In this document: positions 1-36,141 of the stretch, piece after piece | Position numbering within the stretch: position 1 is the first letter of the stretch | Layout of the letters: each line of letters opens with the position of its first letter | From: Mobula hypostoma | Lineage: Eukaryota | Length of the DNA: 64,000 nucleotides | Direction of reading: 5' to 3' | NCBI RefSeq assembly: GCF_963921235.1 | Contig: NC_086107.1 | Location: 46,872,001 to 46,936,000 of the forward strand | Translations under genes and position numbers: made by a program | The notes under the pieces: model-generated | What the model was told of the DNA's origin: nothing | Seen by the model: only the letters and a program-made list of their open reading frames with translations | Database searches by the model: none

Positions 1-111
1 TAAATTTGAAATATTGTGTTGTATCAGGTACAGTCGGCCCTCCTTATCCTCGAGTTCCGCATGCGCGAATTCAACCAACCGCAAATCGAGAAAACCTGGA
101 AGTGCTCTTCC

Positions 112-775: not shown

Positions 776-913
776 GTCCACTGTACTGAGACAGGTTAAA
801 TAAGGTCCGGGGTTCCACTGGGTCCTAAGGTCCACTGCATTTAGACAGGCTAAATAAGGTCCGGGGTACCACTGGGTTCTAAGGTCCACCGCATTTAGAC
901 AGGTTGAATAAGG
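776..913. repeat. 54-bp tandem repeat (~2.6 copies) inside the Tigger element
   Basis: GTCCAC(T/C)G recurs at 776, 830 and 884, a period of 54. Confidence 0.9.
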
Positions 914-1173
914 AGCTCGAGCATCTGCGTTTTTTGGTATCCGCAAGGGGTCTCAGAATAAATCCCTCGCGGATAAGGAGGGCTGACTGTACATGGGATA
1001 TATGCAAAGATTTGATCTCATGCTGATACATATAGTCACCTGAAGTTACATAGTATTAAACGGCACATTAACTGGCCAAATAATTTTTTTCTTCTTCGTC
1101 CCTTGTTCTCATTCTTCTAGTGCTGGCCTGACCCTATAGTATAGTTAGACTTGTTGTTGAGACCAGATTTATT

Positions 1174-1935: not shown

Positions 1936-2081
1936 ATTCCATGATCCTTTGATATTTATCATATCCATTTGTATTTTGTCATGTTTCTGCTGATATTCAC
2001 ATCCCATGTCACATCTCAGTATAGCACATCCCTGGGTAACCAATCAATTCCGTTTTTAAACACATCTATAAGTCGATTTTT

Positions 2082-2210
2082 GAGGGGGGAGGGAGGAGGG
2101 GGAGAGAAGGGGGTGGGGGTGTGGGAGGGAAGGGGAGGGGAGGGGATGGAAGGGGAGAGGGTCAAAGGAGAGGGAGGAAAGAGGGGAGGGTCAAGGGAGA
2201 GGAGAGGGGG
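2082..2210. repeat. GA-rich polypurine low-complexity tract
   Basis: Nearly pure G/A run about 310 bp upstream of the IgV exon. Confidence 0.9.
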
Positions 2211-2520
2211 AATAGTTCTTCAGTTTATTGGAAGGAATGCATTGTTTAAAATAAAGTTCTAGTAAATTCCTCAGGATTTTAAAACCATAATTAGTTAACA
2301 GTAGATGCCGGTAGTAGAGGCCAGTTGTATTTCCTGTCATCTCGTGAGAGTGCCTATTGTCAAGTGTGTCAGTTGTTAAGCACTTTCATAATAAAAATGT
2401 AGCATAACTTCATGTTGATAGGCAAAAACGGCCTCAATCTAAAATTACTTTCCTGCAGTTGGAAGATAAATTAGAAAATTATTGTCTTACTAATGATAAT
2501 TTTGACCTTAATTATTGCAG

Positions 2521-2877
2521 AAGGTGACTTAACAGTGTCTATGGATACAAAAATTGTGGAAGCCACTGTGAATAAAGATGTTCTTCTTGAATGCCGTGTG
2601 TCTGGTTACAAGGCCACGGAAATTGACCTTAGAACCGTTGCAGTTCAGTGGTTCTTTCAAAAACCTGACTCTTCTGACAGACAAGAAGTATATCATTTCA
2701 CTGGAGGCAGGCATACGCCATACAGAAAAGGAGCTGAAATATTTGACAACGAATTGAAGAAGGGAATTGCTTCTCTTTTTCTTCCACTTGTGCAATTTAA
2801 TGAAGAAGGAGATTACACCTGCACTGTTTCTATTAACTTAGAGAATGGAGAAGGAAAATCTTCCATGACTGTTTCAG
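2521..2877 (+). CDS. NCR3LG1: IgV-domain exon of B7-H6-like gene
   Basis: Acceptor ttgcag|aa, donor tcag|gtaaaa, phase 1-1. V-set motifs LLECRV, VQWF, ASLFLP and EEGDYTC. Confidence 0.93.
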
Positions 2878-11800: not shown

Positions 11801-14800
11801 CAATGTGGGCTCGATATTTATATGCTAAACGCAAAGGCAATCACTACCTAAAAAGTTATAGGCAATGCATAGACAATGCTTCCTTTTGAGGCTACATACA
11901 AAACATCACACCTTCTGAATTCATCCTTTCCTTCCGACGCTAACATGTCTGGGTTGGTTTCCACAGCCTTTAGGAATGCAAGTTAAATCCATAATACATC
12001 TATTTGTCATTTTATGTGCTAACATAGAAGACAATTAATATTTATAAAGTATAGATAATACTGTCTTCAAAACTACAGCATCTAGTCAAACTACGGCACC
12101 AGAAGCATCTGGTATTCACACCTTTTTTAGGAAGCGCATTGTTGTGGACTCAATCCACAGTACTTTGTCAAATAGAAGTCTGGTGGCCAAAGTCATTTAA
12201 GTGTAAACGAATTATCTACCCAAAAAAACTCACTCTAACAAATATCTTCCAAACTTTTGATCTCACAGGTTTGTCTATATTGTTTGTGCTCAATCCACTA
12301 AAGCATGCCTGTTTGCATGCAATAAATTTGTCTCTATTTTGCTATCTCTCTCCCCTCTTAGAAGCTTGTGCCTTAAGACTTGGCTTGCATCAGCCTGATT
12401 TGTCTGTCAACTGATATTTCTCACACATGACCCGATTATTTTTTTTGTTTGTGTCTATCTTTTCTTGACTCTTGTGGTGTGTTATCTTTCACTGTGCATT
12501 AATAGCCTCTGCATTTCCAGTTCTTCTGTCCTTCTGTCCTGACATTTCTCACTGCTTTGGCTTCATCTTTGTCTCTGATCTACTTGTGGGTCAATATTTA
12601 TATTGCTTTTAAACTTAGAGGTCACCATAATTGGGATAGACTCAATTGTTTCATACTTTTTTATTTAGTGCAGTGTTAAACTATGCATTGTCTGGTGATA
12701 TTTATGTGAGCAGATGTTTGGTGTAGTTGTATGATTATTCTGATAGCTTTAAAGTAACAAAATTGCCTTGCAAAAAAGAATAACTTTTTAAAATATTTTT
12801 CTAGTACCTCCTAAAGTTTCTGATATCAGCCAGCCTCCACGCATTGTACATTTGGAAGAAACTGTTCTGACTTGTCAGATATCTGGATATAAACCTTCAA
12901 ATATTTCTATTCAATGGTTTCTACAAATAAATGGCGGAACAGAACATAGCATTTGCCGGTGGACTTCTCCGTCTGAGAACTTGAAAGCACCTGAGGAGAT
13001 CGATCAGCAGAGACTTATTGCAGATTATGAAAGTGCAGTGGAAGCTTTTGCATTTGAGATGTCAGCTGTCACAAACAACAGTGATGGTACCTCCAGTCTG
13101 AAGTGTGAAGTTATCTTCTGCCCTGATATTGAGAGAGATAATGAAGCTGTTCTTAAACTTCAAGTTTTGCATAGTAGCAATTTGAGAAAGCCTATTATTA
13201 AGACCATCACATTGAAAGTTGAAGGAAGTAAGTAAGAAAGCAATGAAAATAACTGAATATTTGTCATTAGTAAAATTACTTCATTGTAGAATGGTTTCAG
13301 AAGGGCGAAAAATGAAATGATCATGACTGGATCGGTATCTTTGTCCTCTCTTTTTTTGCACTACTTTTGAATTTCACAATGCATAGTATGCCAGTGATAT
13401 TAAACATAATTCTGATTAGAAAATTACAATGAACACATGAAGTTACAAATTTCTCCATCCACTTGTTTATTCTTAACTGTTTTGTAAGCACTGCACTACC
13501 AGTGTTTAATTTCAGAATCAGGCTTATTATCTCTGGCATATTCATGAAATAAAAAGTACTGCAAGTTACAAAATAAACAAATGGAGTGAAAGACGAGTAA
13601 GGAAGTAGTATTCATGAGTTTGTGTTCTATTGAGAAATCTGATGGCGGAGAGAAAGAAGCTGTTCCTAAACCATGGAGCATGGGTCTTCAGATTCCTTTA
13701 CCTGATCCCCGTGATCGTAATGTGAAGAGGTCATGTCCCAGATGGTGAGAGTCCTTAATGATTGATGCTGCCTTTCTGAGGCACTATTCCTTTTGAAGAT
13801 TTCCTCAGCGATGAGGAGGGTTATCCCCGCAAAGAAACTGGCTGGATCTCTTTCGGAGGCATTGGAGGCTCCATGTCAGGTTGTTATGCAACCAGTGAGA
13901 ATGCTCTATACAGTATGTGTAGAAATTTGCAAGTCTTTGGTGGCCTACTGAACCTTCTCAGACTCCTAATGAAGAAGAGTCACTGATATTCCTTCTGTAT
14001 GATTATAACAATGTGTTGGGCCCAAGATAGACCCTCTGACTTGTTGAAACCCAGGACCATGAAGCTGCCCACCCTTTCTACCAGTGACTGTTCAATGAGG
14101 ACCAGTGAGTGTTCCCTCGACTTTCCCTTCCTGAAGGCTGCAATCGGTTCCTTTGTCTTGCTGATGCTTTGTGCAAAGTTGTTGTTGTGACTGCACTCAA
14201 CCAGCCAATTCATCTCACTCATGTACACTTCCTTTTCAACATCTGAGTTTCTGCCCTCAACAGTGATACTAAATTTAGAGATAACATTTGAGCTGTACCT
14301 AGTCACAGTCATAAGTGTAGATGGATTAGAGCAGTAGGCTAAGCACATATAGTTGAGGTATGCCTGTGTTGATTGTCTGCAAGGAGGAAATGCTATTACA
14401 TAGAACATAACAGCACTTGGCAGGCTCTTCAGTCCATCATGTGTTGTGACAATGTTTTAACTTACTCTTAAGATCAATCTAAGCCTTCTCTCATATATAG
14501 CCCTCCATTTTTCTATCATCCATTTTATTACAATATGCACTGACTGGTATCCCAACAAGGACTAGTGTCACCTGATTTGGAGGACAGGTATACTTGGATT
14601 TTGAGAGGCTTTCTATAGGTACTGTACTAAACGAGCAATTATTACATAAAATTACAGCACACACGATTGGAGGCAATGTTTATCTATGAATTGTGAATTA
14701 AGTAATAGAGAGGGGGAAAAAGAGTGCAGGTCATTTTTGGGCTTGGAGGCTCCGACTAGTGCAGTGTCCTAGTGATCAATCCTGGGGCATCAGATGTTTA

Positions 14801-17800: not shown

Positions 17801-20800
17801 TAGAAAACCTAGCACATTTATTTTTCAACATAGTCCCCTCCTACATTTATACACTTAGTCCAGCGGTCGTGGAGCATATGAATCCTGGACCTTCAGAAAG
17901 TGTCCACAGCAGGAGTGATTGATAAGTTCATGGCCTAAGGTAGAAGGAGATGAGTTATTAACCAAACTTTCTGCATTTTCACTCAAAGAGTTGAACTGCA
18001 TGTGCAGGTAACGAGAGCTGTATAACTCATCTCCTTCTACCTTAGGAGGGGACTATGTTGAAAAAGTGCAATGTTTTCTAAAATTGACTCCTTCTACCTC
18101 AGGCCACAAACTTATCAATCACCCCACATACAGTGTCTTAGAGTAACAGATTTTTTGAAGTTGTTGGATCTTCACTCATGTTTTCTCTTTGTCTTTTGAC
18201 TTTTTTGTATTACTATATCTTTTTTAAAATTTGCAGTCTTTTTTGTAGTTAAATCTTATAAGCCTGAAGTACTCGGCAGTAAATTTTAACAGAAAGGTGC
18301 AGCTTCTGTTAAAATTGCTGTATTTTTATTTATACTCTATTTGCAACAGATTTTAAAAAACTGAAGGTTTATTTATCTAATTAATAAATAAACCTCTCAG
18401 TTTATTTTATCTTTTGCAAAATAAGACAATGTTGTGTGCTGATGACATTAAATATTCTATCCTTTTTTTTCCTTCTCAATAAAAAAAGTTGCACCAAAGA
18501 TGACAGACATTCTAGTACCTCCTTGCATCATTCATGAAGAATTGATTGCATTGTCCTGTCCAATTGATGGATTTAAACCAAGACCACTGGCTATCACTTG
18601 GTACCAGAAGCAGAACAACAAATTGAAAGAAATTGTGAAATATGTGCCACGAGTTCAAGAATCTTTTGCTGGGAATGAAACAAATCTTCCCAAGTATTCC
18701 CACACCTTACATGAGGTGACATACGAAGACCATACTTACAGTATCTTAAGTGTTCTTGCTTTTATACCAACCATTCAGGATGACCATGACACAGAGTATA
18801 TTTGTGAAGCTGAACATCTGTCCACAGGTTCAGAAATACAGAAGGGTGTTACACTAAGCGTAAAAGGTACAGTCAGAATGTATTAGTTCATATTTGCGTA
18901 TCATGTTTTACTATTGTTTTAACTACGATATTTAGGTTATCTTGGAATCAGCCCAGAAAGAACTTCTAGAGGTTTAAACATATTAATTTAAGCACTAACA
19001 CCAAATTCCTTGTTTTATAGCCAAATAATTTATTGTTCTTGTGGTATGATTTTTTTTAAGATATTAAGGTAGATGTCACGTGCAATGACCTCTAATTTGT
19101 GCTAACAAAAACATAAATCTATATTTTAAGATCTCGATGAAGGTGTGGGGATAAAGTATTAACTTGGTAATAATTAAAATATGAAATAATTATATCAGTT
19201 ATTAATTTATTGATTATTTCTGACCAATGTTTTAGCGTGCCCTCTGTTTTAATGGAAAATTCATCTTCACTTTTATTCTACTGTGTTTCTGATCTTCTTG
19301 TCATTTGCCACCCTTGTTGTTACATTAACAGAACTGTTGGAATGTGTGAGTTGCAGAGAAATGCTTCCAAAGGCTTTTAATTGTTCCATAACTAGAGTAA
19401 GCTAAAGATCTGATAGGTTTTATGGTGAATTGTAAAGCACCAAGATGACACAGAGCCTCAGAAGCTTCTGAAGCAAGTTCCATAACGTATATAAGTTAAG
19501 TGGCTGAAGTCCTGACTGCCAATGACACTGCTGTCTGGAAATGAAAAGTAATTATTATTGGTGAAGGAACAAGAGTTAAGGTGCAGGAAATAGTTTTAAA
19601 TAAGCTAATATTTACTGAATGCAGGAATCAGAGGTAGGCCACAAATCATTGCAGTAGTTGAGGCTAGAATTATTGTCTCTCAGTGAAAGTTTAAGCCTAA
19701 ATTGGGCTGAGTCAAGGAATTGGATGATATAAGGCTGAAAGAAAGCTTGTCTATTTCCATGGATCCAGGTATTCATCTTAGGTTCAGGTGGAATACCAAA
19801 GCTTTAGGACAAGGAGGGTAGGGACACCAGTGTGGAGCATGCTAATTTACTAGGGCATGTTGAGATAAAGAACAAGTGTTTATTGGTTCTCTCAAAGAAC
19901 ATTAAGGTGGATAAATCCCCAGGTCCCGATGGGATATGCCTCAGATTATTAAGGAAGGCAAGCAATGAGATTGCTGGGATCTTGACCATGTCCTCTCTAG
20001 CCACATGTGAAGTCCCAGAGAATTGTCAAGTAGCTCATGTGGTTCCATTATTTAAGAAAGGAAATGGGAATCATCCTGCTAACAATAGACAGGAGAATTT
20101 CACATCACTGATAGAGAACTTGCTGATGAGGATTCTTAGGGATGGGATTTATGAGCATTTGGAAAACCATATTGAGGGATAATCAGCACAGCTTTGTGCA
20201 GTGCAAGTTGTGTCTAACTAGCTCAATTAAGTCTTTTTGAGGAAATGATGAAGATAGAGCTGTGGATGTTGTTTACATGGATTTTACTTAGACATTTGAT
20301 AAGGTCCCTCAGAGGAGGTTCATTGAAGAGATATAAATATGTGGGATTCATGGTGAATTGGTCATTTGGATTCTGAATTTATGTGCCCCTAGAAGAGAGA
20401 GGATAGTGGTAGACAGGACCTATTCTTGCTGAATGTCTGTGACTGGTATTCGTGTGGATCCATACTGAGACCTCTGTTATTGGCCAAATAACTAAATGAC
20501 CTGGATGAAAACGTAGATGGGTGGGTTAGGAAGTTTGTAGATGATATGCAAATTGGCAGTGTTTTGGTTAAAATAGTTGACTAGCAAAGGATGCAGTGGG
20601 ATATAGATCAGTTGCAGATGGAGTTTATCTTTGGCCAAATGTGAAGTGTTTCAATTTGAAAATTCAAATGCAAAGGGACAGGGCACTGTTAATAGCAAGA
20701 CCCTTCTGGAGTGGTGCTGGAGCACTGGAAAATCATAAATGTCGCTCCACATTTTAAAAAGGAGAGAGGTAAAACTGTGAAATTATAGGCCAGTAAGCCT

Positions 20801-23800
20801 AACTTCAGTGGTTGGCATGATGTTAGAATGGATTAGTTTTGTTAGGCATTTGACTATGAAATTTGATTGGCACAAGATTGTGGAGTGAAAGGCATGTTCC
20901 TATTCTGTACTGTTTATGGTTAGTATAGATTTATTTAATTACCTGAGTTTAATTTTCCCTAGTATCATGAAGGGTTTGGACTTGAGTCTTCAGATTTCTC
21001 CAGCTATCTATAATAATTCAGTGATCTATTGAATGTGCTACAAAAGCCCCATCAAACTGTATATCAGTATCCTCTTTTTAATGATTCCATCTAAATCTGG
21101 TTCTTAAACAAAACCTGCAGTTTGTCGCAATCTTTTACAGTTTATTTTTCCCTTTCTTTGCTGCTTAGCAATCCCAAAATGTGATGATATAAAAATCGTT
21201 CCTGAAGTCCCAATTGTAGAAGAATTTGGTTTTGCATCATGTCGAATATATTCCTTCTTCCCAAAAAACATCAAAGTTATCTGGAAAATGGATAATAATA
21301 TAATGGAGGAAATGAATGCTGAATCTGAAGCTATCTTGGGAAAGGATGGCCGTTATAGCTGCACAAGTCATTTGAAATTTATTCCCGAAAGAGAAGATTT
21401 GGGAAAGTTATTGACGTGTGAATTCCAGCATGAAAGTATGACAGACACCAAGAAAACTAGCTGTAAATTGTTTAAATTGAGTGAGTAAATGTTTTATTTA
21501 TTAACACTTTTTATTTTGCAATATTCCAATAGCCATTAGAGAACATAAATGGATACATGCAGGAGCTTTTGTTAAATTATTGTTGGTGGTATGGATAATC
21601 TATCAGGTTCATTCCGATATACGTTCTAGTTTCAGCTTCATGGCTGGTCAAACTGGAAAAGCTAACTTTGGACAGTTTAACATTGGCCACTTGTTATGGG
21701 ACCAGAAAATTATCTTTTCACTCGAAGTTTTTATTTTCACAACTTGAAATCTAGTCAGATATCTCAGTGAGTTTTTTCTTGAAGAAAGCAGAAAGGTATA
21801 TGGATATGGATGCAATCTTTGAGGGTCAAAATCCAATCCCGGGCAGGCTGCTCGGTTGTTGGCTAGAATAAGTTTGATAATTAGATGTTACTGTAGACAC
21901 AAAATTGGAAAAGGTATATGAGGAACTTAACTCTTCAACTTTTAAAGCTACGCCAATTTAAAAAATCACAATTACAGAATAAAGTAAAACTTCTACATGG
22001 TAGAATTGGAGCAATCAGCCCAGTGGCCCTTTGCCATTGGTAACATACCATGTGAGTATCCACACAGACACACTACCACTAAATCTAAAATAGTATATCC
22101 TTCCATTTTTTTCTCCCTCATTTTTATCCAGCTGATCTTTAACCCTATGGATCTATCAGCTTGTTAGGGTGGCTTATAAGTCGATTGACCGTAAATGCAA
22201 TTTTTTTTCTGATTTGTATCCAGTTTCAATAAGACCATGTGAGTTGGGTGAAGACTTGTTTGCTTCTTGAATCTTCCATGCTGGCTTTATTTATAACTTC
22301 CCTGTCTGAAGGTGCATAGTTTTAGGAGTGAATTTTTTTTCTGTGTGATTAGGGAAAGTCACATGATGTCCACTACCTGTATAGAGTGGTATAGTGCATA
22401 ATAATGGTAATCTGCAATGTGGTAAAATGTTATTGCTTCACAAGCACATTGGTTTGTTTGATACAAATTTTAAAAATCTTTAGTTTGCAAAATTTCAGTA
22501 ACCCTTGTAGAACACAAATTAGTTAACTGTTAATTCAATTACTGTTAGTATAATGGGTAACCTATTAGATTGATGCACAGATGCATACTAAGTTCTGGAT
22601 TCACTGCTGGCAAAACTGGAGGATGAATGCTCAGTTTTCTTTGTTGGTTTTATCAAACATGAAATATGTTTAGAATGTGGTTCTGCTGAGAAAATTGAAG
22701 CAGTTAGACTTAGATGTAAATCTATCGGTATTAAATACTTGAGCTGAGTTCTCTATATTATCCTTGATCAAATTGATACAGGTACAAGCAAATAACATAT
22801 TAAATCTATGATTTAAGTTGTATGGGCAGCAAGGGCCTTGATTCATAGGATTTAGCATTCTTTTGAGATTGTTCTGTTGAGACATGGTACACTTAAATTG
22901 AGTGAGCAAGCACTCTACTGACAAATGGGATATATTTATTCTAATTAAAAGAGGAAGTGGGGAAAGGAAATATTTAGCACCGGGAGAAAATTCAAGTCTG
23001 TAAAGCAGAGTGAAAGTGTACGGAGTGATATACAAAGGGACAAGGAGATTGTCAGACGTTATTAGAGTTTTTTAAACGGATCAGAGAAAAAAAAGCTAAG
23101 CTTTGTGATTGAGACATTGATCAGGGCAAAATATGAGAAGAGAGTTAGGATTGAGGTGGACTGAGAAACTACACTGCCACCTTGCTTTATGAGTCAATAC
23201 ATTCTCAAGAATGAGAATACGAGTAGAATAATTATAGTTAAAATGGGTTTGTAGGAATGTATATGGATGTGTTATTGGCAGCTCCATTCTGTGAGACACA
23301 GAGAAAACCCTTGCACCCACTCTTCACACACCCAATTTCAGCTGTGCTTGAAATCTGTTTGAGAAACTAGACTTTTGCAGCAGCATTAAAATAGTTGAAA
23401 TGGTCTCATAGCTACCTGGAGAGAGACACCTAGGGAATGTGCAGCAGCTATATGATTGTCTAGCACTGAATTATGTGGCTTAAGGTTGCATTCTGAATGT
23501 TATGGCCAGTAAGAGACATTGCTGGGGAGAAGGGGCAGCGGCTCTATGTGATGTCATTCTGCACTCTGCACCTTCTGATGGATGTGATGGAGCTGCCATG
23601 TTCCCTATCTCTTGTCTGGCTACAGACTCATCTCAGCCCAAAGGTTTCTCAGTAATGCAAGTCCAATACTTTTTCATGCTGAAATGCTAATCTTGGTAGC
23701 TCAAATTCAAGATAATTGTGACTGTTTTCTTGTATAATTTTGTTTGGGTTATTTAAGTAGGTTGTAAAACCACTTCACTTAACAATTTATTTTGATATTT

Positions 23801-26800
23801 ACAGTATCTTCTCCATTAATGGACAAGATGACAGTTGAACCACAATACCCAGAGCCAGGAAACGAAGCAACATTCCTATGCGTTGCTTATGGCTTCTTTC
23901 CAGAGAATGTCATGTTTATGTGGTTCAAAAATGATAAGAGGATTGATGATAATGAAATAATTTCTACCACCCCAGAGATAGATAAAAATACCGGCTTCTT
24001 CTACAGCGAGAGTCGATATAAATACATAATTTCAGTAAAAGATCGTCAAATTGATTTCAAAGTTGAGGCTCTTCATTTTCCAACTTCTCACAGACCTACA
24101 AGGATTTTTCACACCTTGCACCTTGGAGGTATGAATTCAATGTATTCTTAATTTCTACATTTAAACTGTTTTAGAGAGCTACATATTTCTATAGCTATCA
24201 ACATGTCAAAATTTCACACATTTAATAACACAAAATTGTTACACTGAAATGTGTGTGTTTTTATTAAAAGACTACAAATACACATGTAGTAAATCATGCT
24301 ATACAAACTTTATGGTAAAATTTCCTACTTGTCAGTCAAATTTTGGGAAAGAAATTGCATTTAAACTATTAGAAATTAGAATTTATTAAAAAATTTCTGT
24401 AATTAAGTAAAAACAAAAGAGAGATGCCCTGATCCAGTTGACTGTTTGCTGTTTTGTTTGGAAATAACAACATTCAGTGCACATTGTAAAAATGGAAGGT
24501 GAAGAGTCACTGGCTGATTTGAAGACCACAAGTTTAGCCAGCTGCTGCAGACGCTTTAGAATTATTAATAGGGCCCAGGATGATACCCTGCAGTTATTCT
24601 GGGGATTTGATTTGCTCTTTAACTGCGCCCCAAATGGAATCCAGTGATGTAACTTAGAGGTTACATGGATTCCTTGGCATCTTTCTGGGAAATTGCTTCA
24701 CCTTATTGCTAGATTCCTGTGGTGGAACTCAGTGTTGCTAGGGTTCCCTGGTGCTATTTTGGGGAATAGTTTGCTGCATCACTGATCTCTCCATGGAGTT
24801 TGAATAGAGACTCAAGCCACTGCTTCAGATTCGCTAGCATTATTATACGGGATTGCCACTTGAATCCTGTGTCAGATCCAACCTGCTTCAGCATCTGAGA
24901 TCACATTCTTTTTAAAGTGGGTTAAAGAGCAGGCAAGGAACTTCTATCAATTATTTTCTTTTTATGTTATTGGTTGGCATCCATCTGTTGAAGGAAAAGA
25001 GTGATGACCATCATCACAAGCCTGGACAGAAGATAATGGAGATCCTGAGATGCCCAGTCATCAAGATCCCTCTCTTGGCCTCACCAGTGTAGTCCAAAGG
25101 AAAGCCGATGAAACAATACATTTTGTACAAGTATGGCTGCAGGAGCTGCCGGATGAATGTTCAATATTGTCCAACCACCTTAAGGGCTCCACTCCGGATT
25201 TGCTGTCTGGGTTTACTCCCATAGCCTTTGTCTCTCCTAAGGCTGCCCACAAGGCAATGGGGCTATTTACTTATAGCTGGGGATCTGGTTCACAAGCACC
25301 AAGGCGTGTCTATTTGCTGCTGGGCCTGCGTGCTATGTGTGCAGGGACCAGACCTCCTCCCCATCCTCTGTAGTTCAGCCCGAGTCCAAAAGGAATTCAG
25401 TTTCCATGTGTTTGCAATGAGGAGGCACTGCTTGGGGCTTGCTGTTGGAGAGGCCATGTACTGGCAGGGAGAGATTTACACATTTGGGTATCCTTTTCGC
25501 GAGACTGCGAGCCAGCGGTGGAAGCTGAAAGTAAGAGTGACAAACACTACCACACTAGATGCATCACAACAACCATTTTGACACTATTATTAATTATTAT
25601 CCATTTAAAGCTTTAAACTGTTTTATGTTCATATTCTTGATGTTGTATAATTAAGTTTTTTAAATTAACTCTGGGTGTTAGAAACATTAAAAAGTTTAAG
25701 AAATTTTATGTTTTTACTGCCTGTAAAAATTCTGCCTCCATTTGTGCCTGTGCTAGATGGTTGGGTTACTTTAGATTTGGGACCTGGTACAGTTACCGTT
25801 GCTGCTGGACTATTGGATGTGGAGGTAGATTGGCCTTCTACATCTGGATAAAATAAACAAATGTGTGGGACAAGTTCAAACCATAATTCTGGGTATGAAG
25901 ACTTCTCTGCAATGTCTGGCCCTTTTATATTATTCAAAGAACATTACACAGTGATAAAAATAAGTATGCATCAATGAGGTGAACTGAATTTTGTCATGTG
26001 ACAATACGTTAGATGTTTCAGCTATCTAACCCAAGTTGAATCTCAATATTGAATTGTCCAACTCTAGTTAGCACACACAAAATGGTGGAGGAACTCAGCT
26101 GGACTATTGGATGTACAATATAAAAGGGCCAGATGTAGAAGGCCAATCTACCTCCACATCCAATAGGCCAGGCAGCGTCTATGGAAAAGAGAAAGCAGTC
26201 AATGTTTTGGGACATCAGAACTGGTAAAAAGATGAGAAGTCAGAGCAAGAAGGTGGGGGGAGAGGAGGAGAGGAAGAAGTACAAGGTGATAGGTGAAACC
26301 GGGGGCCGGGGGGGCGGGGTAAAGTAAAGAGTTGGGAAGTTGATTGATTAAAAAATAAATAAAAGGCTGGAGAAGGGGGAATCTGATAGATACTGGAAGA
26401 CCATGGAAGAAAGGCAAAGGGGAGGAGCACAGAGGGAGATGATGAACAGGTAAAGAGACGAGGTGAAAGAGGGAAACGGGATTGGGGAATGGTGAAGGGG
26501 GACAATTAACATAAGTTAGAGAACTCAATGTTCATGCCATCAGGTTGGAGGTTACCCAGACGGAATATAAGATGTTGCTCCTCCAGCCTGAGTGTGATCT
26601 CATTCTGGCAGTAGAGGAGGCCATGGTCTGACATGTAGGTATGGGAATGGGAAGTAGAATTGAAATGGCTGGCCACCAACTTTTGTCAACTTGTTTTTTC
26701 TTTCTGTTTTTATCTGGACTTGCCATTTGTAATTTCAATACTGCTTCATCCTCTCACCCACTCCTTTCCTTTCTTTCATTTTCTTTTCTGGCCTGCTGAG

Positions 26801-29800
26801 CATGAAAGCCAGATGAATCAACAGGACCAAGACTGCAAAATGTTAGCAATGTGTTACACATATATTCATTCAATAGTAATAACATTACACCCCGTTTGTT
26901 CCACCCATTGTCCTTCCTCATCTCCTCTGCTGTTTCAACTAACGTCCACTTTGTTTACTTCTTCGTTCTGTTGAAGGGTTGTCCATCTGCAGCGTTAACC
27001 ATTTTCTCTTTCCGCACATGCTGCTTGACAACTGAGTTCTTCCTGCAGTTCCATTCTTTTCTCAGATTCCAACATTTGCATTTTTATTTGCTTTCCAAAT
27101 ATTTCTTTGGTAAGTGGGAGCCATTTCTTGGTTACCAGCTAATTAAGTAAGTACAATTTAGTAAGACTGAAACACATAGAAAAGCTGTTTTGAAGTGTTT
27201 TTATATATTGTCAGTTGATTAGTTTTAAATTTAGTCAGTTCTTTTGGAAACGGTGTCTGCTTTTTCTTCAAATAGGAATTCCAAAGCTTTCTGATGTCAT
27301 TCTCGAGCCAGAAAATCCATTATATGGCCAGCCTCTTGTTCTTAAATGTAATGTAACCAGTTTTTCTCACAATGAAATTTCCACCCAATGGCTAATGGAT
27401 GAGGAACCCTTCTTAAAAGGAGTAAAAAATTCAAGCCCCATAATGGGAAAGGATGGATCTTATCATTTGTCCTCCTGTCTGGAGTTTATACCAACAGCAT
27501 TGCATTATAATAAGAAATTTGCCATTGTGGTGAAAAATGGACTTTCATCTGATGGTATTAAAAAGCAGTTTCGTTTACCGCTTCCAGGTAAGTTAAACTG
27601 GTGCAAAACCCTATACGTTTATTAATTTTGTTAGCAAGAACTGAATTTGTCAGAGTAAAAAAACCAACTGCTAATTGTTTTTGAATAACATAATTTGTTT
27701 TCATATATTTGTTTCCAGCATGGGCCCAGGTGAGTTTATAAACCTTTACTTGAGTAAAGGTATTAATAGCAGAAAAGAAAGGACTTTGAATTGAAGTACA
27801 ATTGAGTCCAGTTAATTGGGACACATCAGACCTGTACATTTTGGTCCAGTTAAGTGGCTGCCCAATTAGCCTAAGTTTCATGGAAATAGTAAGAGACAAA
27901 CTACCATTTAACTGAATAACAAATTATGTATTTAAATGAAATACAGAACAAATTAGAACACTATCAATACCACTACAGTGCTATAAAACTGTATTAGTTC
28001 CTAGTAGTTCATCCAGTGTACATTGCTGCTTCTTTTGATTGATTATAAATGAACAAAATCAGTGCAGACAATGGGCTGCCTTCATACAATGCTATTGATG
28101 ACTGCAATCACCAAATCTTCATTATCGTTATACGATTGTCAATACCTTCAAACTCTTTTTCTTTCTTAACTTGGTTAAGTGGTGTAATCATTTCATTTTC
28201 ACTCCTAGCTGTTCCTAGTATCTCCAAGCCTGAATACTCGAAACCACAGCAAGCAAAGCGGTTCTGAATCGTCTTACTGCTTGTTTCTCACCAATGATCA
28301 GTGACAAAAATCAGTGCTCTATAAACACAAGCACATTCAACTGATGCTCCTTAAAAACAGCTCACTCCAAGCACAGTGTAACTTCTAATGGTCACACAAG
28401 TGCATGCATTTGACGCCAGTTAGAAACTTCCACAACATTCTCCTGCCCCAAATAAGTGGCGTAGTGCCCCCGAATAAAGGAAGAAGTTCCTGGCTTTTTT
28501 CTTGATGAGTTTTGTTCTTTGAAAGTGTCCAAAATAGTGGGAAGATTTGCAAATGTTGCACAGGGGGGTGGGGGCATGGTTTAAACTAGAGTTGCAGGGT
28601 GCACAGAACAGTTCGTGGAGTGGTTATGAAGAAAAATGTAAATCATATATAACCATATAACAATTACAGCATGGAAACATGCCTTCTCGGCCTTTCTAGT
28701 CCGTGCCAAAAGCCTACTCTCACCTAGTCCCACCGACCTGCACTCAGCCCATAACCTTCCATTCCTTCCCAATTTTACGTTAAATGACAATATCAAGCCT
28801 GCCTCCACCACTTTTACTGGAAGCTCGTTCCACACAGCTACCACTCTCTGAGTAAAGAAGTTTCCCCTCACATTACCCCTAAACTTTTGCCCCCTCTCAA
28901 CTCATGTCCTCTTGTTTGAATCTCCCCTACTCTCAATGGAAAAAGCCTATCCACGTCAACTCTATCCACCCCCCTCAACCTTCTACGCTCCAAAGAATAA
29001 AGACCCAACTTGTTCAACCTTTCTCTGTAATTTAGGTGCTGAAACCCAGGTAACATTATAGTAAATCTTCTCTATACTCTTTCTATTTTGTTGACATCTT
29101 TTCTATAATTCGGTGACCAGAACTGTAGACAGTACTCCAAATTTGGCCTTACCAATGCCTTGTACAATTTTAACATTACATCCCAACTCCTATACTCAAT
29201 GCTCTGATTTATAAAGGCCAGCATATCAAAAGCTTTCTTCACCACCCTATCCACATGAGATTCCATCTTCAGGGAACTATGCACCATTATTACTAGATCA
29301 CTCTGTTCTACTGCATTCTTCAATGCCCTATCATTTACCATGTATGTCCCATTTTGATTAGTCCTCCCAAAATGTAGCACCTCACACTCATCAGTATTAA
29401 ACTCCATTTGCCATCTTTCAGCCCACTATTCTAACTGGCCTAAATTTCTCTGCAAGCTTTGAAAGCCTCCTTCATTATCCACAATGCCACCTATCTTGGT
29501 ATCATCTGCATTCTTACTAATCCAATTTACCACCCCATCAGTCACCGGCCTCCAACCTGACAAGCAGTTATCCACCACTACTCTCTGGCCTCTCCCATCC
29601 TGCCAATGTTGAATCCATTTTACTACTTCAATATTAATACCTAACATTTGAATCTTCCTAACTAACCTTCCATGTGGAACCTTGTCAAAGGCCTTACTGA
29701 AGTCCATATAGATAACATCCACTGCGTTACCCTCGTTAACTTTCCTAGTAACCTCTTCAAAAAATTCAATTTGTCAAACATGACCTTCCACGCACAAATC

Positions 29801-32800: not shown

Positions 32801-35689
32801 TTGGAGGATAGCTAATGTTGTTCCATTGTTTACGAAAGGCTCTATGAATACGCCACAAAATCAGTAGTGGGAATGTTATTGGAAGGTGGTCTAAAGGTCC
32901 AGATATATAAGTATTTGGATAGATAGGGATTGATTAGGGATAGTTAACCTGGCTTTGTGCATGGTAGGTCGTGTCTAACAAATCTTATAGAGTTTTTCGA
33001 GGAACAAGCCAGTAAAGTTGATTAAGGCAAGACAGTGGACGTTGTCCACATGGACTTTAGTGAGGCCTTTGATGAAGTGCTGCATGGGAGGTTGGTCAAG
33101 AAGGCTCAGTCACTTGGCATTCATGATGAGGTAGTAAATGGTTGCTTCTCTGACTGGAAGCCTCTGACTAGTAGTGTGCCACAGGGATTAGTGCTGGGTC
33201 TATTGTTGTTTGTCATCTACATCAATGATCTGTATAATAATGCAGTAAACTGGATCAGCCACTTTGCTGATGACACCATGATTAGGGGGTGTAGTGGACA
33301 GCAAGGAAGACTATCAAAGCATGTAGCAGGATCTGGACCAGCTGGCAAATGGAATGAAAAAAATGGAATGCACCAACCCGGTCTTACATGAAGAGCGGTA
33401 GGGCACTGAAGAGTGTAGTAGAACAGAGGAATCTGGGAATACAGATCCATAAATTCCTGCAAATGGCATCACATTTAGATAGTCTTAAAAGAAAGCTTTT
33501 GGAGCATTGGCCTTCATTAATCAATGTATTGAGTATAGGAATTGGGATATTATGTTGAAATTGTATAAGATGTCAGTGTGAGGTCTAATTTGGAGTATTG
33601 TGTGCAGTTTTGGTCACCTACCTACAGGAAAGATGTAAATAAGATTGGGGGGAACGTCGACTCAGACCATGAGAGGCCTGCGTCAGGCATTTTCATGCCT
33701 TACAAGGTGCAGATTAGAAGTGCGGGGCGCCACTGCTCACACAGACTAGAGCAATGTGTGATTAAGTGCCTTGCTCAAGGGCACAAACACACCACCACAG
33801 CTGAGGCTCGAACTAGCAACCTTGAGAGAACTCCTTGACGAACTCCTTAACCACTTGGCCACCTGCCCAATAAGGTTGAAAGAGTGCAAAGAAAATTTAC
33901 AAGGATACTGCCAACACTTGAGGACCTGAGTTATAGGAGAAGGTTAAATAGGTTAAGACTTTATTCCCGAGAACGTAGAAAATTGAGGGGAGATTTGATA
34001 GACATACAAAATTTATGAGTAGTATTGATAGTGCAAATACAAGCAGGCTTTTTGCAGTGATGTTAGGTGAGACTAGAACTAGTGGTAATTGGCTAAGGGT
34101 GAAAGGTGAAATTTTTAAGGGGAACACAAGGTGAAACTTCTTCACTGAGAGGGTGGTGAGAATGTGGAATGAGCTGTCAGCACAAGTGGTGGATGCGGGT
34201 TCGATTTCAACATTTAAGAGAAATTTGGATAGGTATGTGGATGGGAGAGGAATGGAGGGTTATGGTCCAGGTGCAGGTCGATGGGACTAAGCAGATCAAT
34301 GGATCAGCATGGTCTAGATGAGCCGAAGGGCCTGGTTCTATGCTGTAGTGTTCTGTGGCTCTGTGATTCTAAGTGGCTGCTCCGATTATCCGATAACTCA
34401 ATAAACCAAGTCCACTTTTACATCCATGTTAAAAGCTGAGCATGTGACTGAATCAGTGTCATATTTCACTTAATTTTTCAACATTTCAAATTTTGAACCT
34501 TCCAACATACGAATTAGATGGGACGTTATTGTAGCCTTGAGAACAAAGTACACCTTAGCAATTTTAGGACTTTTAAAAAAAAATTATGGGACCATTTTTA
34601 AACCTATCTGATTTACTAATGGGCTTGGAGGTGGAAGAGTGCTATTTTGGCAAACCTGGCTTATACACACTCCAGAACCAAAGCAATATGTTAACTCTTA
34701 GCTGCCTTTTATAAATCCTCATCTATGAGATTACTGGGTATAATAGGATCAAATATTCCGTTTGAGGATTGGAGTTTGTTCAATTACCCACATTTACTCC
34801 TCTCAGTAAATGTATGATGTCATTGGAAACAAGGGTCCAGATGTCATATTTAGAATCACTAATAAGAGTTGCTCAAGGCATCTCAATACTACATTGTAAA
34901 AGTTATGTTTCTTAACACTTGTTATTGGCTATTCATCAGAAATACAACCAACCTCGTTTCCCATGTAAACTGTTAACATCTTTTCCAACTGCTCAGTAAT
35001 TCATGCTTTTATGTGCCCATCCTGAAAGTGTATAATTTTTTATTAAACTCTAGAAAATATCTTTACCGAATAAATTTTGTTGTTTCCACTTTCTACTCCT
35101 ATATTCCTTCCTGATTAAGGATTTATGTAGGCCTGCTGACATTTATTTAGCCTACAAACGGTGCCGTTTTGAATGTTTACTTGGATATATGTGATATATC
35201 ATTTTCTCAGATGCTTTAATCTATAGCGGTCTTGTCTACTGTATAAGCTTTAGTATTTGAAATTTCTACATTCAACATATTTATCTTAACTTTGGAAAAT
35301 TTATTTGTCAGAATTTGAACAATCAGCTCTAGTCAATGGGACTGACTATATTTGCATGTTGTGTTCCACTTTAAGGACATTTCCCCACTGTGTCTGAAAT
35401 CAAGTGCAACCCAACACATCTGGAGGAAAACAGAATGGCTACTTTCACAGTTTCACTGACCAATTATGTACCACTGGAAATTGAAGTGAAGTGGTTCAAA
35501 GGAGAACAACCCTTCACAGGACCTGTGAATAATAGTCAACCTCAGATTACTGCAAGTGGTCTTTTTTCTTCAACAACCAGCATAGAATTTGCTCCAGAAC
35601 GATCTGATCAGGACTTGGAAGTCAGATGTACGATATTTCACTCAGAGACAAGCAAAAGAATAGAACAAAAGTTTCATTTAACATTTTGA
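2521..35689 (+). CDS. NCR3LG1: B7-H6/NCR3LG1-like multi-exon gene (V-C1-TM plus six C1-type Ig domains); leader exon upstream of window
   Basis: Nine exons with AG/GT boundaries, all phase 1, join into one open frame (2858 nt including stop). V and C1 resemble human B7-H6 as recalled from memory: DLTVSM vs DLKVEM; GFYPKTIEMSW vs GFYPEAINITW; TGSPIKNNDGTYSVSSRMRL...YICFVRHRSL vs [20 protein letters not shown]...YQCVVRHASL. Linkage of the post-TM exons to the TM exon is inferred from phase and strand. Confidence 0.8.
3067..3355 (+). mobile_element. tRNA-derived SINE
   Basis: A-box-like TGGCATAGCGG and B-box-like GGTTCAAATTCC, with an AATAAA/TAATC-type tail. Confidence 0.7.
4083..4403 (+). CDS. 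NCR3LG1: extracellular IgC1 exon of B7-H6-like gene
   Basis: Acceptor tttacag|cc, donor aaag|gtaagt, phase 1-1. C1 motifs VNCSSTGFYPKTIEMSW, DGTYSVSS and YICFVRH; N-glycosylation sequons NGT and NCS. Confidence 0.93.
4878..5165 (+). mobile_element. CR1 LINE 3' end
   Basis: Matches the CR1 ORF2 C-terminus (GNMRGNFFT...VWNE) and 3' UTR seen elsewhere in the window. Confidence 0.7.
5924..6040 (+). CDS. NCR3LG1: transmembrane exon of B7-H6-like gene
   Basis: Acceptor ttttttaacag|ag, donor aaag|gtaaga, 117 nt, phase 1-1. Encodes EPEVVVPGG-IIAGSVFASVLICSLIMIIGFVMYL-RYFRK: a hydrophobic helix followed by a basic stop-transfer. Confidence 0.9.
6240..6730 (-). mobile_element. CR1 LINE 3' fragment
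   Basis: ORFs 6332-6580 and 6477-6713 give RRMRGDLIETFRMLKGLDRVD and FFSQRVVDLWNSLP; (cacaagat) tail. Confidence 0.85.
7205..9700 (-). mobile_element. degenerate CR1 LINE (APE-RT, fragmented)
   Basis: Fragmented ORFs with AFDKVPH, GNYRPVSLTS and ADWKTANVTPL motifs. Confidence 0.85.
10393..11490 (-). mobile_element. ERV/LTR-retroelement gag-like ORF, truncated at the first zinc knuckle
   Basis: Uninterrupted 365-codon frame with likely Met at 11292. Gag-like HKPFTPGEKQSIFSELP and acidic/basic helical segments, ending at VCFACRQ. Lies directly downstream of a PBS and LTR on the same strand. Confidence 0.7.
11648..11665 (-). promoter_or_regulatory. primer binding site complementary to tRNA-Leu
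   Basis: Minus strand TGGTGTCAGGAGTAGGAT, 17/18 match to the complement of the vertebrate tRNA-Leu(CAG) 3' end as recalled (ATCCCACTCCTGACACCA); 2 nt from the LTR end. Confidence 0.8.
11668..12120 (-). mobile_element. 5' LTR of the ERV-like element
   Basis: Minus strand ends in CA next to the PBS and carries a TATA-like motif (~11820) and AATAAA (~11730). The distal TG boundary near 12120 is tentative. Confidence 0.65.
12805..13227 (+). CDS. post-TM C1-type Ig exon 1 (141 aa, with loop insertion)
   Basis: Acceptor tttttctag|ta, donor gga a|gtaagt, phase 1-1. LTCQISGYKPSNISIQWF and NNSDGTSS present; the F-strand Cys is replaced (VLKLQVLH). Confidence 0.85.
13605..14400 (-). mobile_element. 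Rex1/Babar-like LINE 3' fragment
   Basis: ORF 13980-14408 resembles the RT C-terminal region (ISKTKE..FRK...VERVGSFMVLG). Confidence 0.65.
14992..16258 (-). mobile_element. L1-clade LINE 3' fragment
   Basis: zf-RVT-like QCDRCKTEIATLTHMFWSC and LLARRAILLKWK...EKI motifs; A-rich tail. Confidence 0.8.
15272..15487. repeat. palindromic (hairpin) short interspersed repeat inserted in the L1
   Basis: Near-perfect inverted arms at ~15277-15354 and ~15371-15443; flanking duplication GAGCTATAC(A/G)CCATA at 15265-15279 and 15488-15502. Confidence 0.8.
17751..18130. mobile_element. mariner-type MITE
   Basis: Terminal TACGAGGGGTGATTGATAAGTT and inverse AACTTATCAATCACCCCACATA, TA ends; internal extra TIR-like copy near 17913. 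Confidence 0.8.
18489..18866 (+). CDS. post-TM C1-type Ig exon 2 (126 aa)
   Basis: Acceptor (T)nCCTTCTCAATAAAAAAAG|tt, donor aaag|gtacag, phase 1-1. LSCPIDGFKPRPLAITWY and EYICEAEH, both Cys kept. Confidence 0.85.
19780..20930 (+). mobile_element. degenerate CR1 LINE fragments
   Basis: KVDKSPGPDGI, VAHVVPLFKKG and related RT motifs. Confidence 0.75.
21169..21480 (+). CDS. post-TM C1-type Ig exon 3 (104 aa)
   Basis: Acceptor ctgcttag|ca, donor ttg a|gtgagt, phase 1-1. ASCRIYSFFPKNIKVIW, DGRYSCTSHLKFIP and LTCEFQH, both Cys kept. Confidence 0.88.
23805..24128 (+). CDS. post-TM C1-type Ig exon 4 (108 aa)
   Basis: Acceptor tttacag|ta, donor gga g|gtatga, phase 1-1. FLCVAYGFFPENVMFMWFKN present; the F-strand Cys is replaced (FKVEALH). 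Confidence 0.88.
24960..25590 (-). mobile_element. internally deleted RTE-like LINE
   Basis: RTE-like 3' end (...CAGATGGATGCCAACCAA on the minus strand) joined to degenerate endonuclease-like sequence. Confidence 0.5.
26070..26660 (+). mobile_element. Penelope-associated interspersed repeat (CACACACAAAATG..GGAGGAACTCAGC family)
   Basis: Same head motif recurs at ~40095 and ~43060; purine-rich body. Confidence 0.55.
27276..27587 (+). CDS. post-TM C1-type Ig exon 5 (104 aa)
   Basis: Acceptor cttcaaatag|ga, donor ccag|gtaagt, phase 1-1. LKCNVTSFSHNEISTQW and DGSYHLSSCLEFIP present; the F-strand Cys is replaced (FAIVVK). Confidence 0.88.
27799..28540. mobile_element. Tigger-like non-autonomous element, truncated
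   Basis: Starts TACAATTGAGTCCAGTTAATTGGGACAC, with internal CCCAATTA/CCCAAATAA subterminal repeats. Confidence 0.5.
28635..31375 (-). mobile_element. CR1 LINE ORF2 (APE+RT), degenerate
   Basis: ORF fragments from YFNARSIVKKVNEL/AISETWL through DFSKAFDKVPH and NADDTKIGG to RGNFFTQRVV; (AACCATAT) tail. Confidence 0.9.
31412..34365 (+). mobile_element. CR1 LINE ORF2, degenerate, head-to-head with the previous copy
   Basis: From TATTTCAATGCAAGGAGT through DKSPGP, VPQGLVLG and HFADDT to the 3' UTR. Confidence 0.85.
33648..33870 (-). mobile_element. tRNA-type SINE inserted in CR1
   Basis: Interrupts CR1 between AAGATTG and AATAAGGTTGAAAGAG; minus strand starts GGGCAGGTGGCCAAGTGGTTAAGG (A-box-like). 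Confidence 0.6.
35376..35689 (+). CDS. terminal post-TM C1-type Ig exon 6 (with stop)
   Basis: Acceptor ccactttaag|ga, phase 1. The B-strand Cys is replaced (ATFTVSL); EVKWFKG, GLFSSTTSIEFAP and VRCTIFH present. TGA at 35687-35689. Confidence 0.85.
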
Positions 35690-35888
35690 GGTAAATGTGA
35701 TTTTGTTCCACTTGTTGCCTCCAAGGATCAAGTCCAACTTCTAAAATAGCTCCCCAAACAACAGTACATCAGTGGCATATACAGGCCATTTGGGACAAAG
35801 ATGTCTCAAGGCCCTTCATAAGTGTGTTAGCAAATTAAATTTTAACCAAAGCCCATTATGAGATGCAAGGACAGATGACCATAAATTG

Positions 35889-35894
35889 AATAAA
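35889..35894 (+). terminator. candidate polyadenylation signal
   Basis: AATAAA 200 nt after the stop; the AT-rich background makes a chance match plausible. Confidence 0.35.
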
Positions 35895-36141
35895 AGTGAT
35901 GGTTTTAATAGACATTTTGAAAAATGGAGAAGAGTAACAAAAATGTAAAAACTGAATTCCAGACTGAGAAGCAGTTGGTAGCCAATGTAGATTTTGAATA
36001 TTAATAGTATTATTATTGAAAGAATACCAGGAGTTCAGAGTGGGGGAACAGAACTGAAGGTGGTAGTGCTATATAATAGGAAGTGAATTTGGAGGATTTG
36101 ATTATTAAACATGAGAATGGCTGTTTGGAAGATTGTTTGAT

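What the first reader, a model, noticed from the sequence alone, without database searches (positions are those of the whole stretch)
12805..35689. Four of six post-TM Ig domains have lost one cysteine of the canonical disulfide
Seen: the F-strand Cys is absent in exons 12805 (LKLQVLH), 23805 (FKVEALH) and 27276 (FAIVVK), and the B-strand Cys is absent in 35376 (FTVSL). The core Trp and open frames are kept, and both pre-TM domains keep both Cys. Established: cytosolic Ig domains often lack the disulfide. Inference: this is independent sequence support for cytosolic location under continued selection on the fold, rather than pseudogene decay.
Basis: partly seen in the sequence, partly recalled or inferred. 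Interest (0 to 1): 0.7.

Follow-up and report, generated by a model that had tools for sequence, protein, structure and literature searches.

The report
Disulfide-poor Ig tail of ray B7-H6
A devil-ray surface protein of the B7-H6 (NK-cell ligand) type carries six antibody-constant-type domains behind its membrane anchor; four of them lost one bridge-forming cysteine before sharks, rays and chimaeras split yet stayed under selection, as expected if this chain sits inside the cell, a placement I found described nowhere for such domains.

Summary
Observation confirmed. The plus-strand gene has V, C and TM exons and six C1-set Ig exons (D1-D6), all phase 1-1 and open, with the stop inside D6. D1, D4 and D5 lack the F-strand Cys and D6 lacks the B-strand Cys. 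D2, D3 and both pre-TM domains keep both, and every domain keeps the Trp.

This is not decay. The same pattern occurs in 17 chondrichthyan orthologues, chimaera included, and largely recurs in coelacanth and newt relatives. dN/dS of D1-D6 is about 0.45 in three independent species pairs, with no stops. Spliced RNA contigs from four runs join V, C and TM and continue for a D1-D6-sized stretch.

Cytosolic placement is inferred, not shown, but well supported:
- Signal peptide in orthologues, one TM, and basic residues after it.
- In 92 relatives with the same layout, 88% of pre-TM C1 domains keep both Cys against 54% of post-TM domains. In 18 multi-C1 proteins with a C-terminal TM, 141 of 141 domains keep both.
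- Stray cysteines are 3-10 times commoner behind the TM.

The ectodomain is closest to human B7-H6. The scan had already flagged this layout at two neighbouring paralogues of this genome. I found no description in the papers I could search.

The parts
2521..2877 (+). IgV exon of the ectodomain (both canonical Cys, Trp); phase 1-1
   Evidence: (V-set, 1.5e-9). Covered with 0 mismatches by spliced RNA contigs at 2518-2874 (the aligner's cut is ambiguous by 2-3 nt).
4083..4403 (+). IgC (C1-set) exon of the ectodomain, C/W/C
   Evidence: (C1-set, 4.6e-13). RNA joint 2874>4080, GT..AG.
5924..6040 (+). Transmembrane exon: EPEVVVPGGIIAGSVFASVLICSLIMIIGFVMYL followed by RYFRK; phase 1-1
   Evidence: Hydropathy scan and splice sites. 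RNA joint 4401>5922 in all four runs, and the contigs run on about 2313 nt past 6040.
12805..13227 (+). D1, first post-TM Ig exon: B Cys and Trp kept, F-strand Cys replaced by Leu (LKLQV). Carries a long C-E insertion predicted disordered
   Evidence: Pfam C1-set 20.9 bits, against a cut-off of 21. AF2 strands at positions 26/40/121.
18489..18866 (+). D2, C/W/C, with a conserved Tyr-rich insertion
   Evidence: The exon is held fully by RNA runs X1-X4.
21169..21480 (+). D3, C/W/C
23805..24128 (+). D4, F-strand Cys replaced by Val (FKVEA); the most conserved domain
27276..27587 (+). D5, F-strand Cys replaced by Ile (FAIVV)
35376..35690 (+). D6, B-strand Cys replaced by Val (FTVSL), F Cys kept. 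The stop codon TGA at 35687-35689 sits 1 nt before a GT donor
   Evidence: The RNA runs hold only the coding part of 35600-35920, so the donor at 35690 appears to be used and a 3' UTR exon lies further downstream.

Best explanation
The window holds a functional, transcribed B7-H6-like gene. It lacks only its leader exon, which lies upstream of the window. The product is a type I membrane protein: signal peptide, IgV, IgC1, one TM helix with a basic stop-transfer flank, then six C1-set-derived Ig domains, ending at ...HLTF. The six-domain chain most likely lies in the cytosol, where the B-F disulfide cannot form. There the paired cysteines are constrained only as hydrophobic core residues. Before holocephalans and elasmobranchs diverged, and for most positions apparently before the cartilaginous/bony fish split (inferred from the shared pattern in coelacanth and newt relatives), one Cys in each of D1, D4, D5 and D6 was replaced by Leu/Val/Ile/Phe without loss of the fold. 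Shown: sequence, splicing, conservation and purifying selection. Inferred: topology, and that the tail acts as a folded intracellular scaffold or sensor coupled to the NK-ligand-type ectodomain. That would be analogous in logic to the cytosolic B30.2 domain of butyrophilins.
For: Cys pattern. Same pattern in 17 orthologues, including Callorhinchus. Coelacanth, lungfish and newt relatives show it in most positions (C-x, CC, CC, C-x, then C-x or CC, x-C). dN/dS 0.45-0.46 for D1-D6 and 0.45-0.59 for the Cys-deficient domains, with upper CI below 1 and no stops. Conserved 10-exon structure. Spliced RNA contigs in four runs cover V-C-TM with 0 mismatches, then run on 2311-2313 nt in three runs (1519 nt in the fourth, shorter contig). 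D1-D6 is 2064 nt, which leaves about 249 nt of UTR. A skate RNA contig carries one 958-aa ORF, SP-V-C-TM-D1..D6. Family statistics: both Cys present in 88% of pre-TM, 54% of post-TM and 100% (141/141) of control domains. Lost Cys are replaced by V/L/I/F. Sporadic Cys columns: 1 of 227 in the ectodomain against 32 of 686 post-TM (p = 0.0015). Non-canonical Cys per 100 aa: 1.82 post-TM, 0.58 pre-TM, 0.46 control. K+R after/before the TM = 317/146 and D+E = 60/226. AF2 mean pLDDT is 88, all six domains are beta-sandwiches, and all 18 B/C/F positions lie in strands. Ectodomain best PDB match is human B7-H6, 9e-32. Intracellular Ig domains rely on a hydrophobic core; APEG-1 has an Ile-Cys pair at B/F: PMC1352370.
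Against: No experiment places the tail. No dedicated topology predictor was available, only hydropathy and charge counts. D2 and D3 keep both Cys in all 17 orthologues, which a purely reducing environment does not require. The orphan Cys are equally conserved, however, so retention need not mean a disulfide. NCBI isoform X2 of Carcharodon and Cetorhinus omits the TM exon, which would send D1-D4 through the secretory path. Because the TM exon is phase 1-1, skipping it keeps the frame. The TM-to-D1 junction in this species rests on contig length, not on a laid joint. The family counts are not phylogenetically independent. N-glycosylation sequon density does not discriminate.
Confidence: 0.75

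Rival explanations
1. The D1-D6 chain is, mainly or also, extracellular or secreted, because the phase 1-1 TM exon is skipped in the relevant isoform. The missing cysteines are then tolerated losses, as in the few extracellular Ig domains that lack the disulfide.
For: NCBI isoform X2 of Carcharodon and Cetorhinus joins C directly to D1. D2 and D3 retain both Cys in all orthologues. All exons are phase 1-1.
Against: In four ray RNA runs, the only joint listed from the C exon donor goes to the TM exon. The skate transcript includes the TM. Conventional extracellular multi-C1 chains, including one from Mobula, keep 141/141 disulfide pairs. Stray Cys are 3-10 times enriched behind the TM. Contigs can hide minor isoforms, so a minor secreted form is not excluded.
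Confidence: 0.12
2. The post-TM exons are decaying or relaxed duplicates of the extracellular C exon (pseudo-exons), and the Cys losses are early signs of that.
For: Four of six domains lack a canonical Cys. D1 falls just under the Pfam C1-set cut-off.
Against: dN/dS is about 0.45 with upper CI at most 0.63. There are no stops in six species. The losses are identical in 17 orthologues spanning the chimaera split. The exons are expressed. AF2 pLDDT is about 87-92 for the Cys-deficient domains. dN of D4 and D6 is lower than that of the ectodomain.
Confidence: 0.01
3. The architecture is a gene-model artefact: a short V-C-TM gene fused in silico to a separate downstream multi-Ig gene.
For: Most family members are automatic predictions named 'uncharacterized protein'.
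Against: Single RNA contigs of 3.2-3.3 kb in three of the four runs (2.4 kb in the fourth) contain V, C and TM and continue for a length that fits D1-D6 plus a UTR. A 3517-nt skate RNA contig has one ORF through all ten exons. The motif after the TM, KVPPK(V/L)(S/T)(D/E)I, recurs in several rays, sharks, the chimaera and the coelacanth.
Confidence: 0.02

Closest known systems
Human B7-H6 / NCR3LG1 (PDB 3PV6, 4ZSO, 6YJP)
   Same: IgV plus IgC1 ectodomain with both disulfides, followed by a single TM. It is the best solved-structure match of the orthologue's ectodomain (9e-32, against 6e-20 for CD276). NCBI names the alligator and Rhinophrynus family members NCR3LG1.
   Different: From my own knowledge, the human cytoplasmic tail is a short gag-like sequence with ITIM/SH2/SH3-type motifs. 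Here the tail is about 690 residues of six C1-set-type Ig domains. Binding to NKp30 is untested.
Butyrophilins (e.g. BTN3A1), B7 relatives with a cytosolic B30.2 domain
   Same: A B7-type V-C ectodomain, one TM, then a folded beta-sandwich module on the cytosolic side. This is the only comparable logic within the wider B7 family, and it is a possible model for inside-out signalling (my own knowledge; an analogy only).
   Different: The cytosolic module here is Ig C1-set, not PRY/SPRY. No B30.2 match was found. No ligand is known.
Intracellular I-set Ig domains of muscle proteins (titin, telokin, APEG-1, obscurin)
   Same: Ig sandwiches in a reducing compartment, held by a hydrophobic core rather than the B-F disulfide. 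APEG-1 has an Ile/Cys pair at B/F, like D6 here (PMC1352370). Titin I65-I70 is the top Foldseek match of the six-domain model.
   Different: Those are I-set domains of soluble cytoskeletal proteins. These are C1-set by Pfam, a set otherwise known from Ig, TCR, MHC, tapasin, SIRP and B7 ectodomains, and they hang on a membrane protein.
UrIg2 and other multi-C1 membrane proteins with a C-terminal TM
   Same: Long chains of C1-set domains in elasmobranchs. P0057 from Mobula resembles Ig heavy chains and UrIg2.
   Different: Their C1 chain lies before the TM, and every domain keeps the disulfide: 141/141 here, and in the UrIg2 crystal structure (PMC12227049). The window's gene has the TM after the first C domain.

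Membership tests
B7 family, B7-H6 (NCR3LG1) type | N-terminal IgV followed by IgC domain, each with the canonical disulfide Cys and Trp | tested here: met
   Pfam V-set 1.5e-9 and C1-set 4.6e-13; C/W/C in both domains.
B7 family, B7-H6 (NCR3LG1) type | Closest sequence relative among characterised proteins is B7-H6 | tested here: met
   Pristis orthologue V-C against PDB: NCR3LG1 9e-32, next CD276 6e-20. With the window's V exon alone, CD276 (2.3e-9) and NCR3LG1 (3.6e-9) score about equally.
B7 family, B7-H6 (NCR3LG1) type | Single-pass type I membrane protein | tested here: met
   One hydrophobic exon at 5924-6040 and no other in the gene. Signal peptides in orthologues. Hydropathy only; no dedicated predictor was available.
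B7 family, B7-H6 (NCR3LG1) type | Gag-like cytoplasmic tail as in human B7-H6 | tested here: not met
   The tail consists of six C1-set matches and folds as six Ig sandwiches.
B7 family, B7-H6 (NCR3LG1) type | Binds NKp30 | not testable with these tools
No complex prediction was run, because the report does not claim binding.
Ig C1-set domain (PF07654) | Profile match above the curated cut-off | tested here: met
   D2-D6 score 30-46 bits against a cut-off of 21. D1 scores 20.9 bits, just below it.
Ig C1-set domain (PF07654) | B-F disulfide pair | tested here: not met
   Absent in D1, D4, D5 and D6; present in D2 and D3.
Ig C1-set domain (PF07654) | Core Trp and seven-strand sandwich | tested here: met
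   Trp is invariant in the window's seven domains. AF2 pLDDT is 88, and the B, C and F positions lie in strands.
Unprocessed pseudogene / decaying exons | Stops, frameshifts or dN/dS near 1 | tested here: not met
   No stops in six species; dN/dS 0.45 (CI 0.34-0.60).
UrIg / UrIg2 | VJ domain, all C1 domains extracellular, TM at the C-terminus | tested here: not met
   The TM follows the first C domain and the protein ends after D6 without a second TM. Description of UrIg2: PMC12227049.

The most novel reading that the evidence does not exclude
The ancestral jawed-vertebrate B7-H6 was a two-sided Ig protein. Its V-C ectodomain faced NK-type receptors. A chain of C1-set Ig domains, adapted to the reducing cytosol, worked as an intracellular sensor or scaffold that couples the state of the cell to display of the ligand, as B30.2 does in butyrophilins. 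This layout is found in cartilaginous fish, bichir, coelacanth, lungfish, amphibians and crocodilians, and has been replaced in mammals. It would be the first use of the adaptive-immunity C1-set domain inside the cell.
Probability: 0.3. Interest if true: 0.9.

Novelty: new variant of a known kind. Interest (0 to 1): 0.75.

Why it matters
C1-set domains are regarded as the extracellular hallmark of the adaptive immune system (Ig, TCR, MHC, tapasin, B7). A conserved chain of them behind a membrane anchor, evolving with the cysteine signature of cytosolic proteins, would enlarge what this domain is known to do.

It would also give B7-H6, whose cytoplasmic function is obscure even in humans, an ancestral intracellular module that can be tested.

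The cysteine pattern offers a simple sequence-only marker of compartment that can be applied across the whole family. The family is large: 92 of the 150 best hits have the layout. It is named 'uncharacterized' in nearly every database entry I looked at.

Tried and rejected
- Leader exon: a tblastn of orthologue signal peptides against window 1-2600 found nothing. The exon lies upstream of the window or in the N gap at 112-272.
- TM-to-D1 junction: read laying could not span it, because the two exons are 6.8 kb apart and the limit is 6 kb. I laid V-C-TM instead and used contig lengths.
- D6 as terminal exon: I expected the 3' UTR to run on after the D6 stop codon. The RNA runs hold only the coding fifth of 35600-35920, so the donor at 35690 is used and the AATAAA at 35889 is not this gene's signal.
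- Sequon density (0.85 per 100 aa in the ectodomain, 0.61 post-TM) does not discriminate.
- Foldseek on the whole six-domain model returned only generic multi-Ig chains.
- Literature: five searches found no description of post-TM Ig domains in B7-H6. The two most relevant papers (Flajnik 2012, PMC3709836; Ohta and Flajnik 2015, PMC4594805) are not held, so prior mention there cannot be excluded.
- UrIg2 identity was considered and rejected on architecture.
- The 365-aa minus-strand ORF in the TM-D1 intron has no Pfam match and is not part of the gene.

Full report
**What is there**

On the plus strand I rebuilt the gene from ORFs, AG/GT sites and reading frame.

| Exon | Coordinates |
|---|---|
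| IgV | 2521-2877 |
| IgC | 4083-4403 |
| TM | 5924-6040 |
| D1 | 12805-13227 |
| D2 | 18489-18866 |
| D3 | 21169-21480 |
| D4 | 23805-24128 |
| D5 | 27276-27587 |
| D6 | 35376-35690 |

- Every exon length is a multiple of three and every exon is phase 1-1. The joined frame is open for 951 residues and ends at a TGA (35687-35689) inside D6.
- Pfam calls the first exon V-set and all seven others C1-set. D1 is borderline, at 20.9 bits against a cut-off of 21.
- The TM exon reads EPEVVVPGGIIAGSVFASVLICSLIMIIGFVMYL-RYFRK. It is the only hydrophobic stretch in the gene.
- The leader exon is not in the window.

**The observation**

In the alignment of the seven C-type domains, the residues at B-strand Cys / core Trp / F-strand Cys are:

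| Domain | B / Trp / F |
|---|---|
| ecto C | C/W/C |
| D1 | C/W/L |
| D2 | C/W/C |
| D3 | C/W/C |
| D4 | C/W/V |
| D5 | C/W/I |
| D6 | V/W/C |

The V domain also has both Cys.

**Is the gene real and is the TM part of the message?**

- Four runs that hold the D2 exon completely were laid on 2400-8399. Introns have zero depth, so these runs are RNA.
- Each run gives one contig lying with no mismatch on V, C and TM, with GT..AG joints 2874>4080 and 4401>5922. No joint from the C exon to anywhere else was listed.
- After the TM exon the contigs continue for 2313, 2313 and 2311 nt in three runs, and 1519 nt in the fourth, shorter contig. D1-D6 add up to 2064 nt, which leaves about 249 nt of 3' UTR.
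- The runs do not hold the DNA just after 35690. So that donor is used, and the stop lies 1 nt before the last junction.
- The TM-to-D1 link in this species therefore rests on contig length, not on a joint I could lay.
- In a skate the link is direct. A 3517-nt RNA contig (SRR5172151) has a single 958-aa ORF running leader-V-C-TM-D1..D6.

**Orthologues and selection**

- A profile search and a follow-up search returned colinear orthologues from rays, skates, sharks and the chimaera Callorhinchus. Identity to the window is 45-96%. All are named 'uncharacterized protein'. The closest is a Mobula birostris protein at 96.5%.
- Mapping five of them to their DNA gives the same ten exons in each species and no internal stop.
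- The Cys pattern is the same in all 17 orthologues. The only further changes are a second loss in D4 of Callorhinchus and a Trp-to-Cys change in D1 of the skates.

Nei-Gojobori dN/dS in three pairs that share no branch:

| Region | Window-Pristis | Skate transcript-Rhinoraja | Heptranchias-Rhincodon |
|---|---|---|---|
| D1-D6 | 0.455 (0.34-0.60) | 0.46 (0.35-0.63) | 0.45 (0.35-0.55) |
| Ectodomain (V+C) | 0.43 | 0.375 | 0.29 |
| Cys-deficient domains (D1, D4, D5, D6) | 0.50 | 0.59 | 0.45 |

- For the four Cys-deficient domains all upper limits are below 1.
- D4 and D6 change more slowly at the protein level than the ectodomain in the Window-Pristis pair.
- Decay is excluded. The losses are old and fixed.
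- The pattern largely recurs in coelacanth, lungfish and newt relatives. This suggests it predates the split of cartilaginous and bony fish.

**Which side of the membrane?**

This is inferred, from four lines of evidence.

1. *Topology signals.* Orthologues have a leader peptide. Across 93 proteins with this layout, the 15 residues after the TM hold 317 K+R and 60 D+E, against 146 and 226 before it.
   - 92 of the 150 best hits have one or two C1 domains, a TM, then 2-13 more C1 domains.
   - Both Cys are present in 103/117 pre-TM domains (88%) and 248/462 post-TM domains (54%).
   - 18 hits have at least four C1 domains followed by a C-terminal TM, the conventional extracellular arrangement. 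They keep both Cys in 141/141 domains.
   - That control set includes a Mobula protein resembling Ig heavy chains and UrIg2. The UrIg2 crystal structure shows the canonical disulfide in every domain (PMC12227049).
   - So the named refuter, similar loss in extracellular homologues, is not seen.
3. *Free cysteines.* In the orthologue alignment, non-conserved Cys occupy 1 of 227 ectodomain columns but 32 of 686 post-TM columns (p = 0.0015). Family-wide, non-canonical Cys run at 1.82 per 100 aa behind the TM, 0.58 before it and 0.46 in the controls.
4. *The fold is kept.*
   - Lost Cys are replaced almost only by V, L, I or F.
   - AlphaFold2 with 27 sequences gives mean pLDDT 88 and six sandwiches. 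D4, D5 and D6 are at about 87-92.
   - Only the D1 insertion is disordered, and all 18 B/C/F positions lie in strands.
   - Published structures state that intracellular Ig domains rely on a hydrophobic core. APEG-1 has an Ile/Cys pair at the B/F positions (PMC1352370).

**Points against**

- D2 and D3 have kept both Cys in all 17 orthologues, chimaera included. The orphan Cys of D1, D4, D5 and D6 are equally conserved, so conservation of a core Cys does not by itself show a disulfide. The point still stands.
- NCBI lists TM-less isoforms for two lamniform sharks, and the phase 1-1 TM exon can be skipped in frame. A minor secreted form cannot be excluded from contigs.
- The family counts involve related domains, so the p-values are only indicative.

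**What it is like**

- The orthologue's ectodomain matches human B7-H6 far better than any other solved protein (9e-32, against 6e-20 for CD276).
- NCBI names the alligator and Rhinophrynus members NCR3LG1.
- The family occurs in cartilaginous fish, bichir, coelacanth, lungfish, frogs, salamanders, caecilians and crocodilians.
- It fails one feature of human B7-H6, the gag-like tail. It is not UrIg2, whose TM is C-terminal.
- The nearest functional analogy is the butyrophilins, B7 relatives with a folded cytosolic B30.2 sensor. That is an analogy from my own knowledge, not a tested link.

**Novelty**

Two earlier notes of this scan (s1-141902, s1-142035) flagged the same layout at neighbouring paralogues of this genome. 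The cysteine evidence, the controls and the dN/dS here are new support on different DNA. Five literature searches found no description. The two most relevant B7-H6 evolution papers could not be read.

Noticed in passing
window 35690-35940: The stop codon of the gene lies 1 nt before a GT donor. The RNA runs hold the coding end of D6 but not the DNA after it, so a 3' UTR exon of about 249 nt must lie further downstream. I did not locate it. The AATAAA at 35889 is probably unrelated.
   Followed up: partly
P0162, P0163, P0160, P0013, P0164, P0165 (orthologues): NCBI isoforms vary. Carcharodon and Cetorhinus X2 lack the TM exon. Hemiscyllium X2 lacks D1. Several shark models, including these two X2 isoforms, end after D4 with a short alternative end. 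The phase 1-1 exons allow cassette use of the TM and single Ig domains.
   Followed up: partly
window 18600-18760 (D2 insertion) and 12950-13090 (D1 insertion): D2 carries a conserved Tyr-rich acidic insertion (consensus PKYxHSxxExxYEDxTYS), and D1 a long loop predicted disordered (pLDDT below 50). These are candidate phosphorylation or docking sites if the tail is cytosolic.
   Followed up: no
frog proteins such as P0002, P0009, P0010: Amphibian relatives have up to 13 post-TM domains in a two-domain repeat that alternates a domain with no Cys (L/W/V) and one with both (C/W/C). This suggests tandem expansion of a domain pair after the Cys loss.
   Followed up: no
window 10393-11490, minus strand: A 365-aa ORF in the TM-D1 intron with no Pfam match, surrounded by reverse-transcriptase fragments. 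Possibly a retroelement gag-like ORF.
   Followed up: partly
window 6300-8600, 28500-31400, 32100-33900, 36800-38100, 46000-48730, 50277-50927: The introns and the downstream region are full of retroelement remains, including an RT plus endonuclease pair (46037-48730, minus strand) and an integrase core (50277-50927, minus strand). In the stretch laid (2400-8399), the fragments at about 6200-8400 show very high RNA contig depth.
   Followed up: partly
window 57000-58750 and 59200-59400: Low-complexity Pro/Ser/Leu-rich (reverse strand Gly/Arg/Glu-rich) repeats interrupted by two N gaps, and a short PSRAE-type tandem repeat.
   Followed up: no
window 4240-4260 (C exon): The ectodomain C domain has a fifth Cys (HFCTGSP) at a column conserved across the orthologue alignment. 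This is an odd number of Cys for an extracellular region, and it may form an interchain bridge.
   Followed up: no
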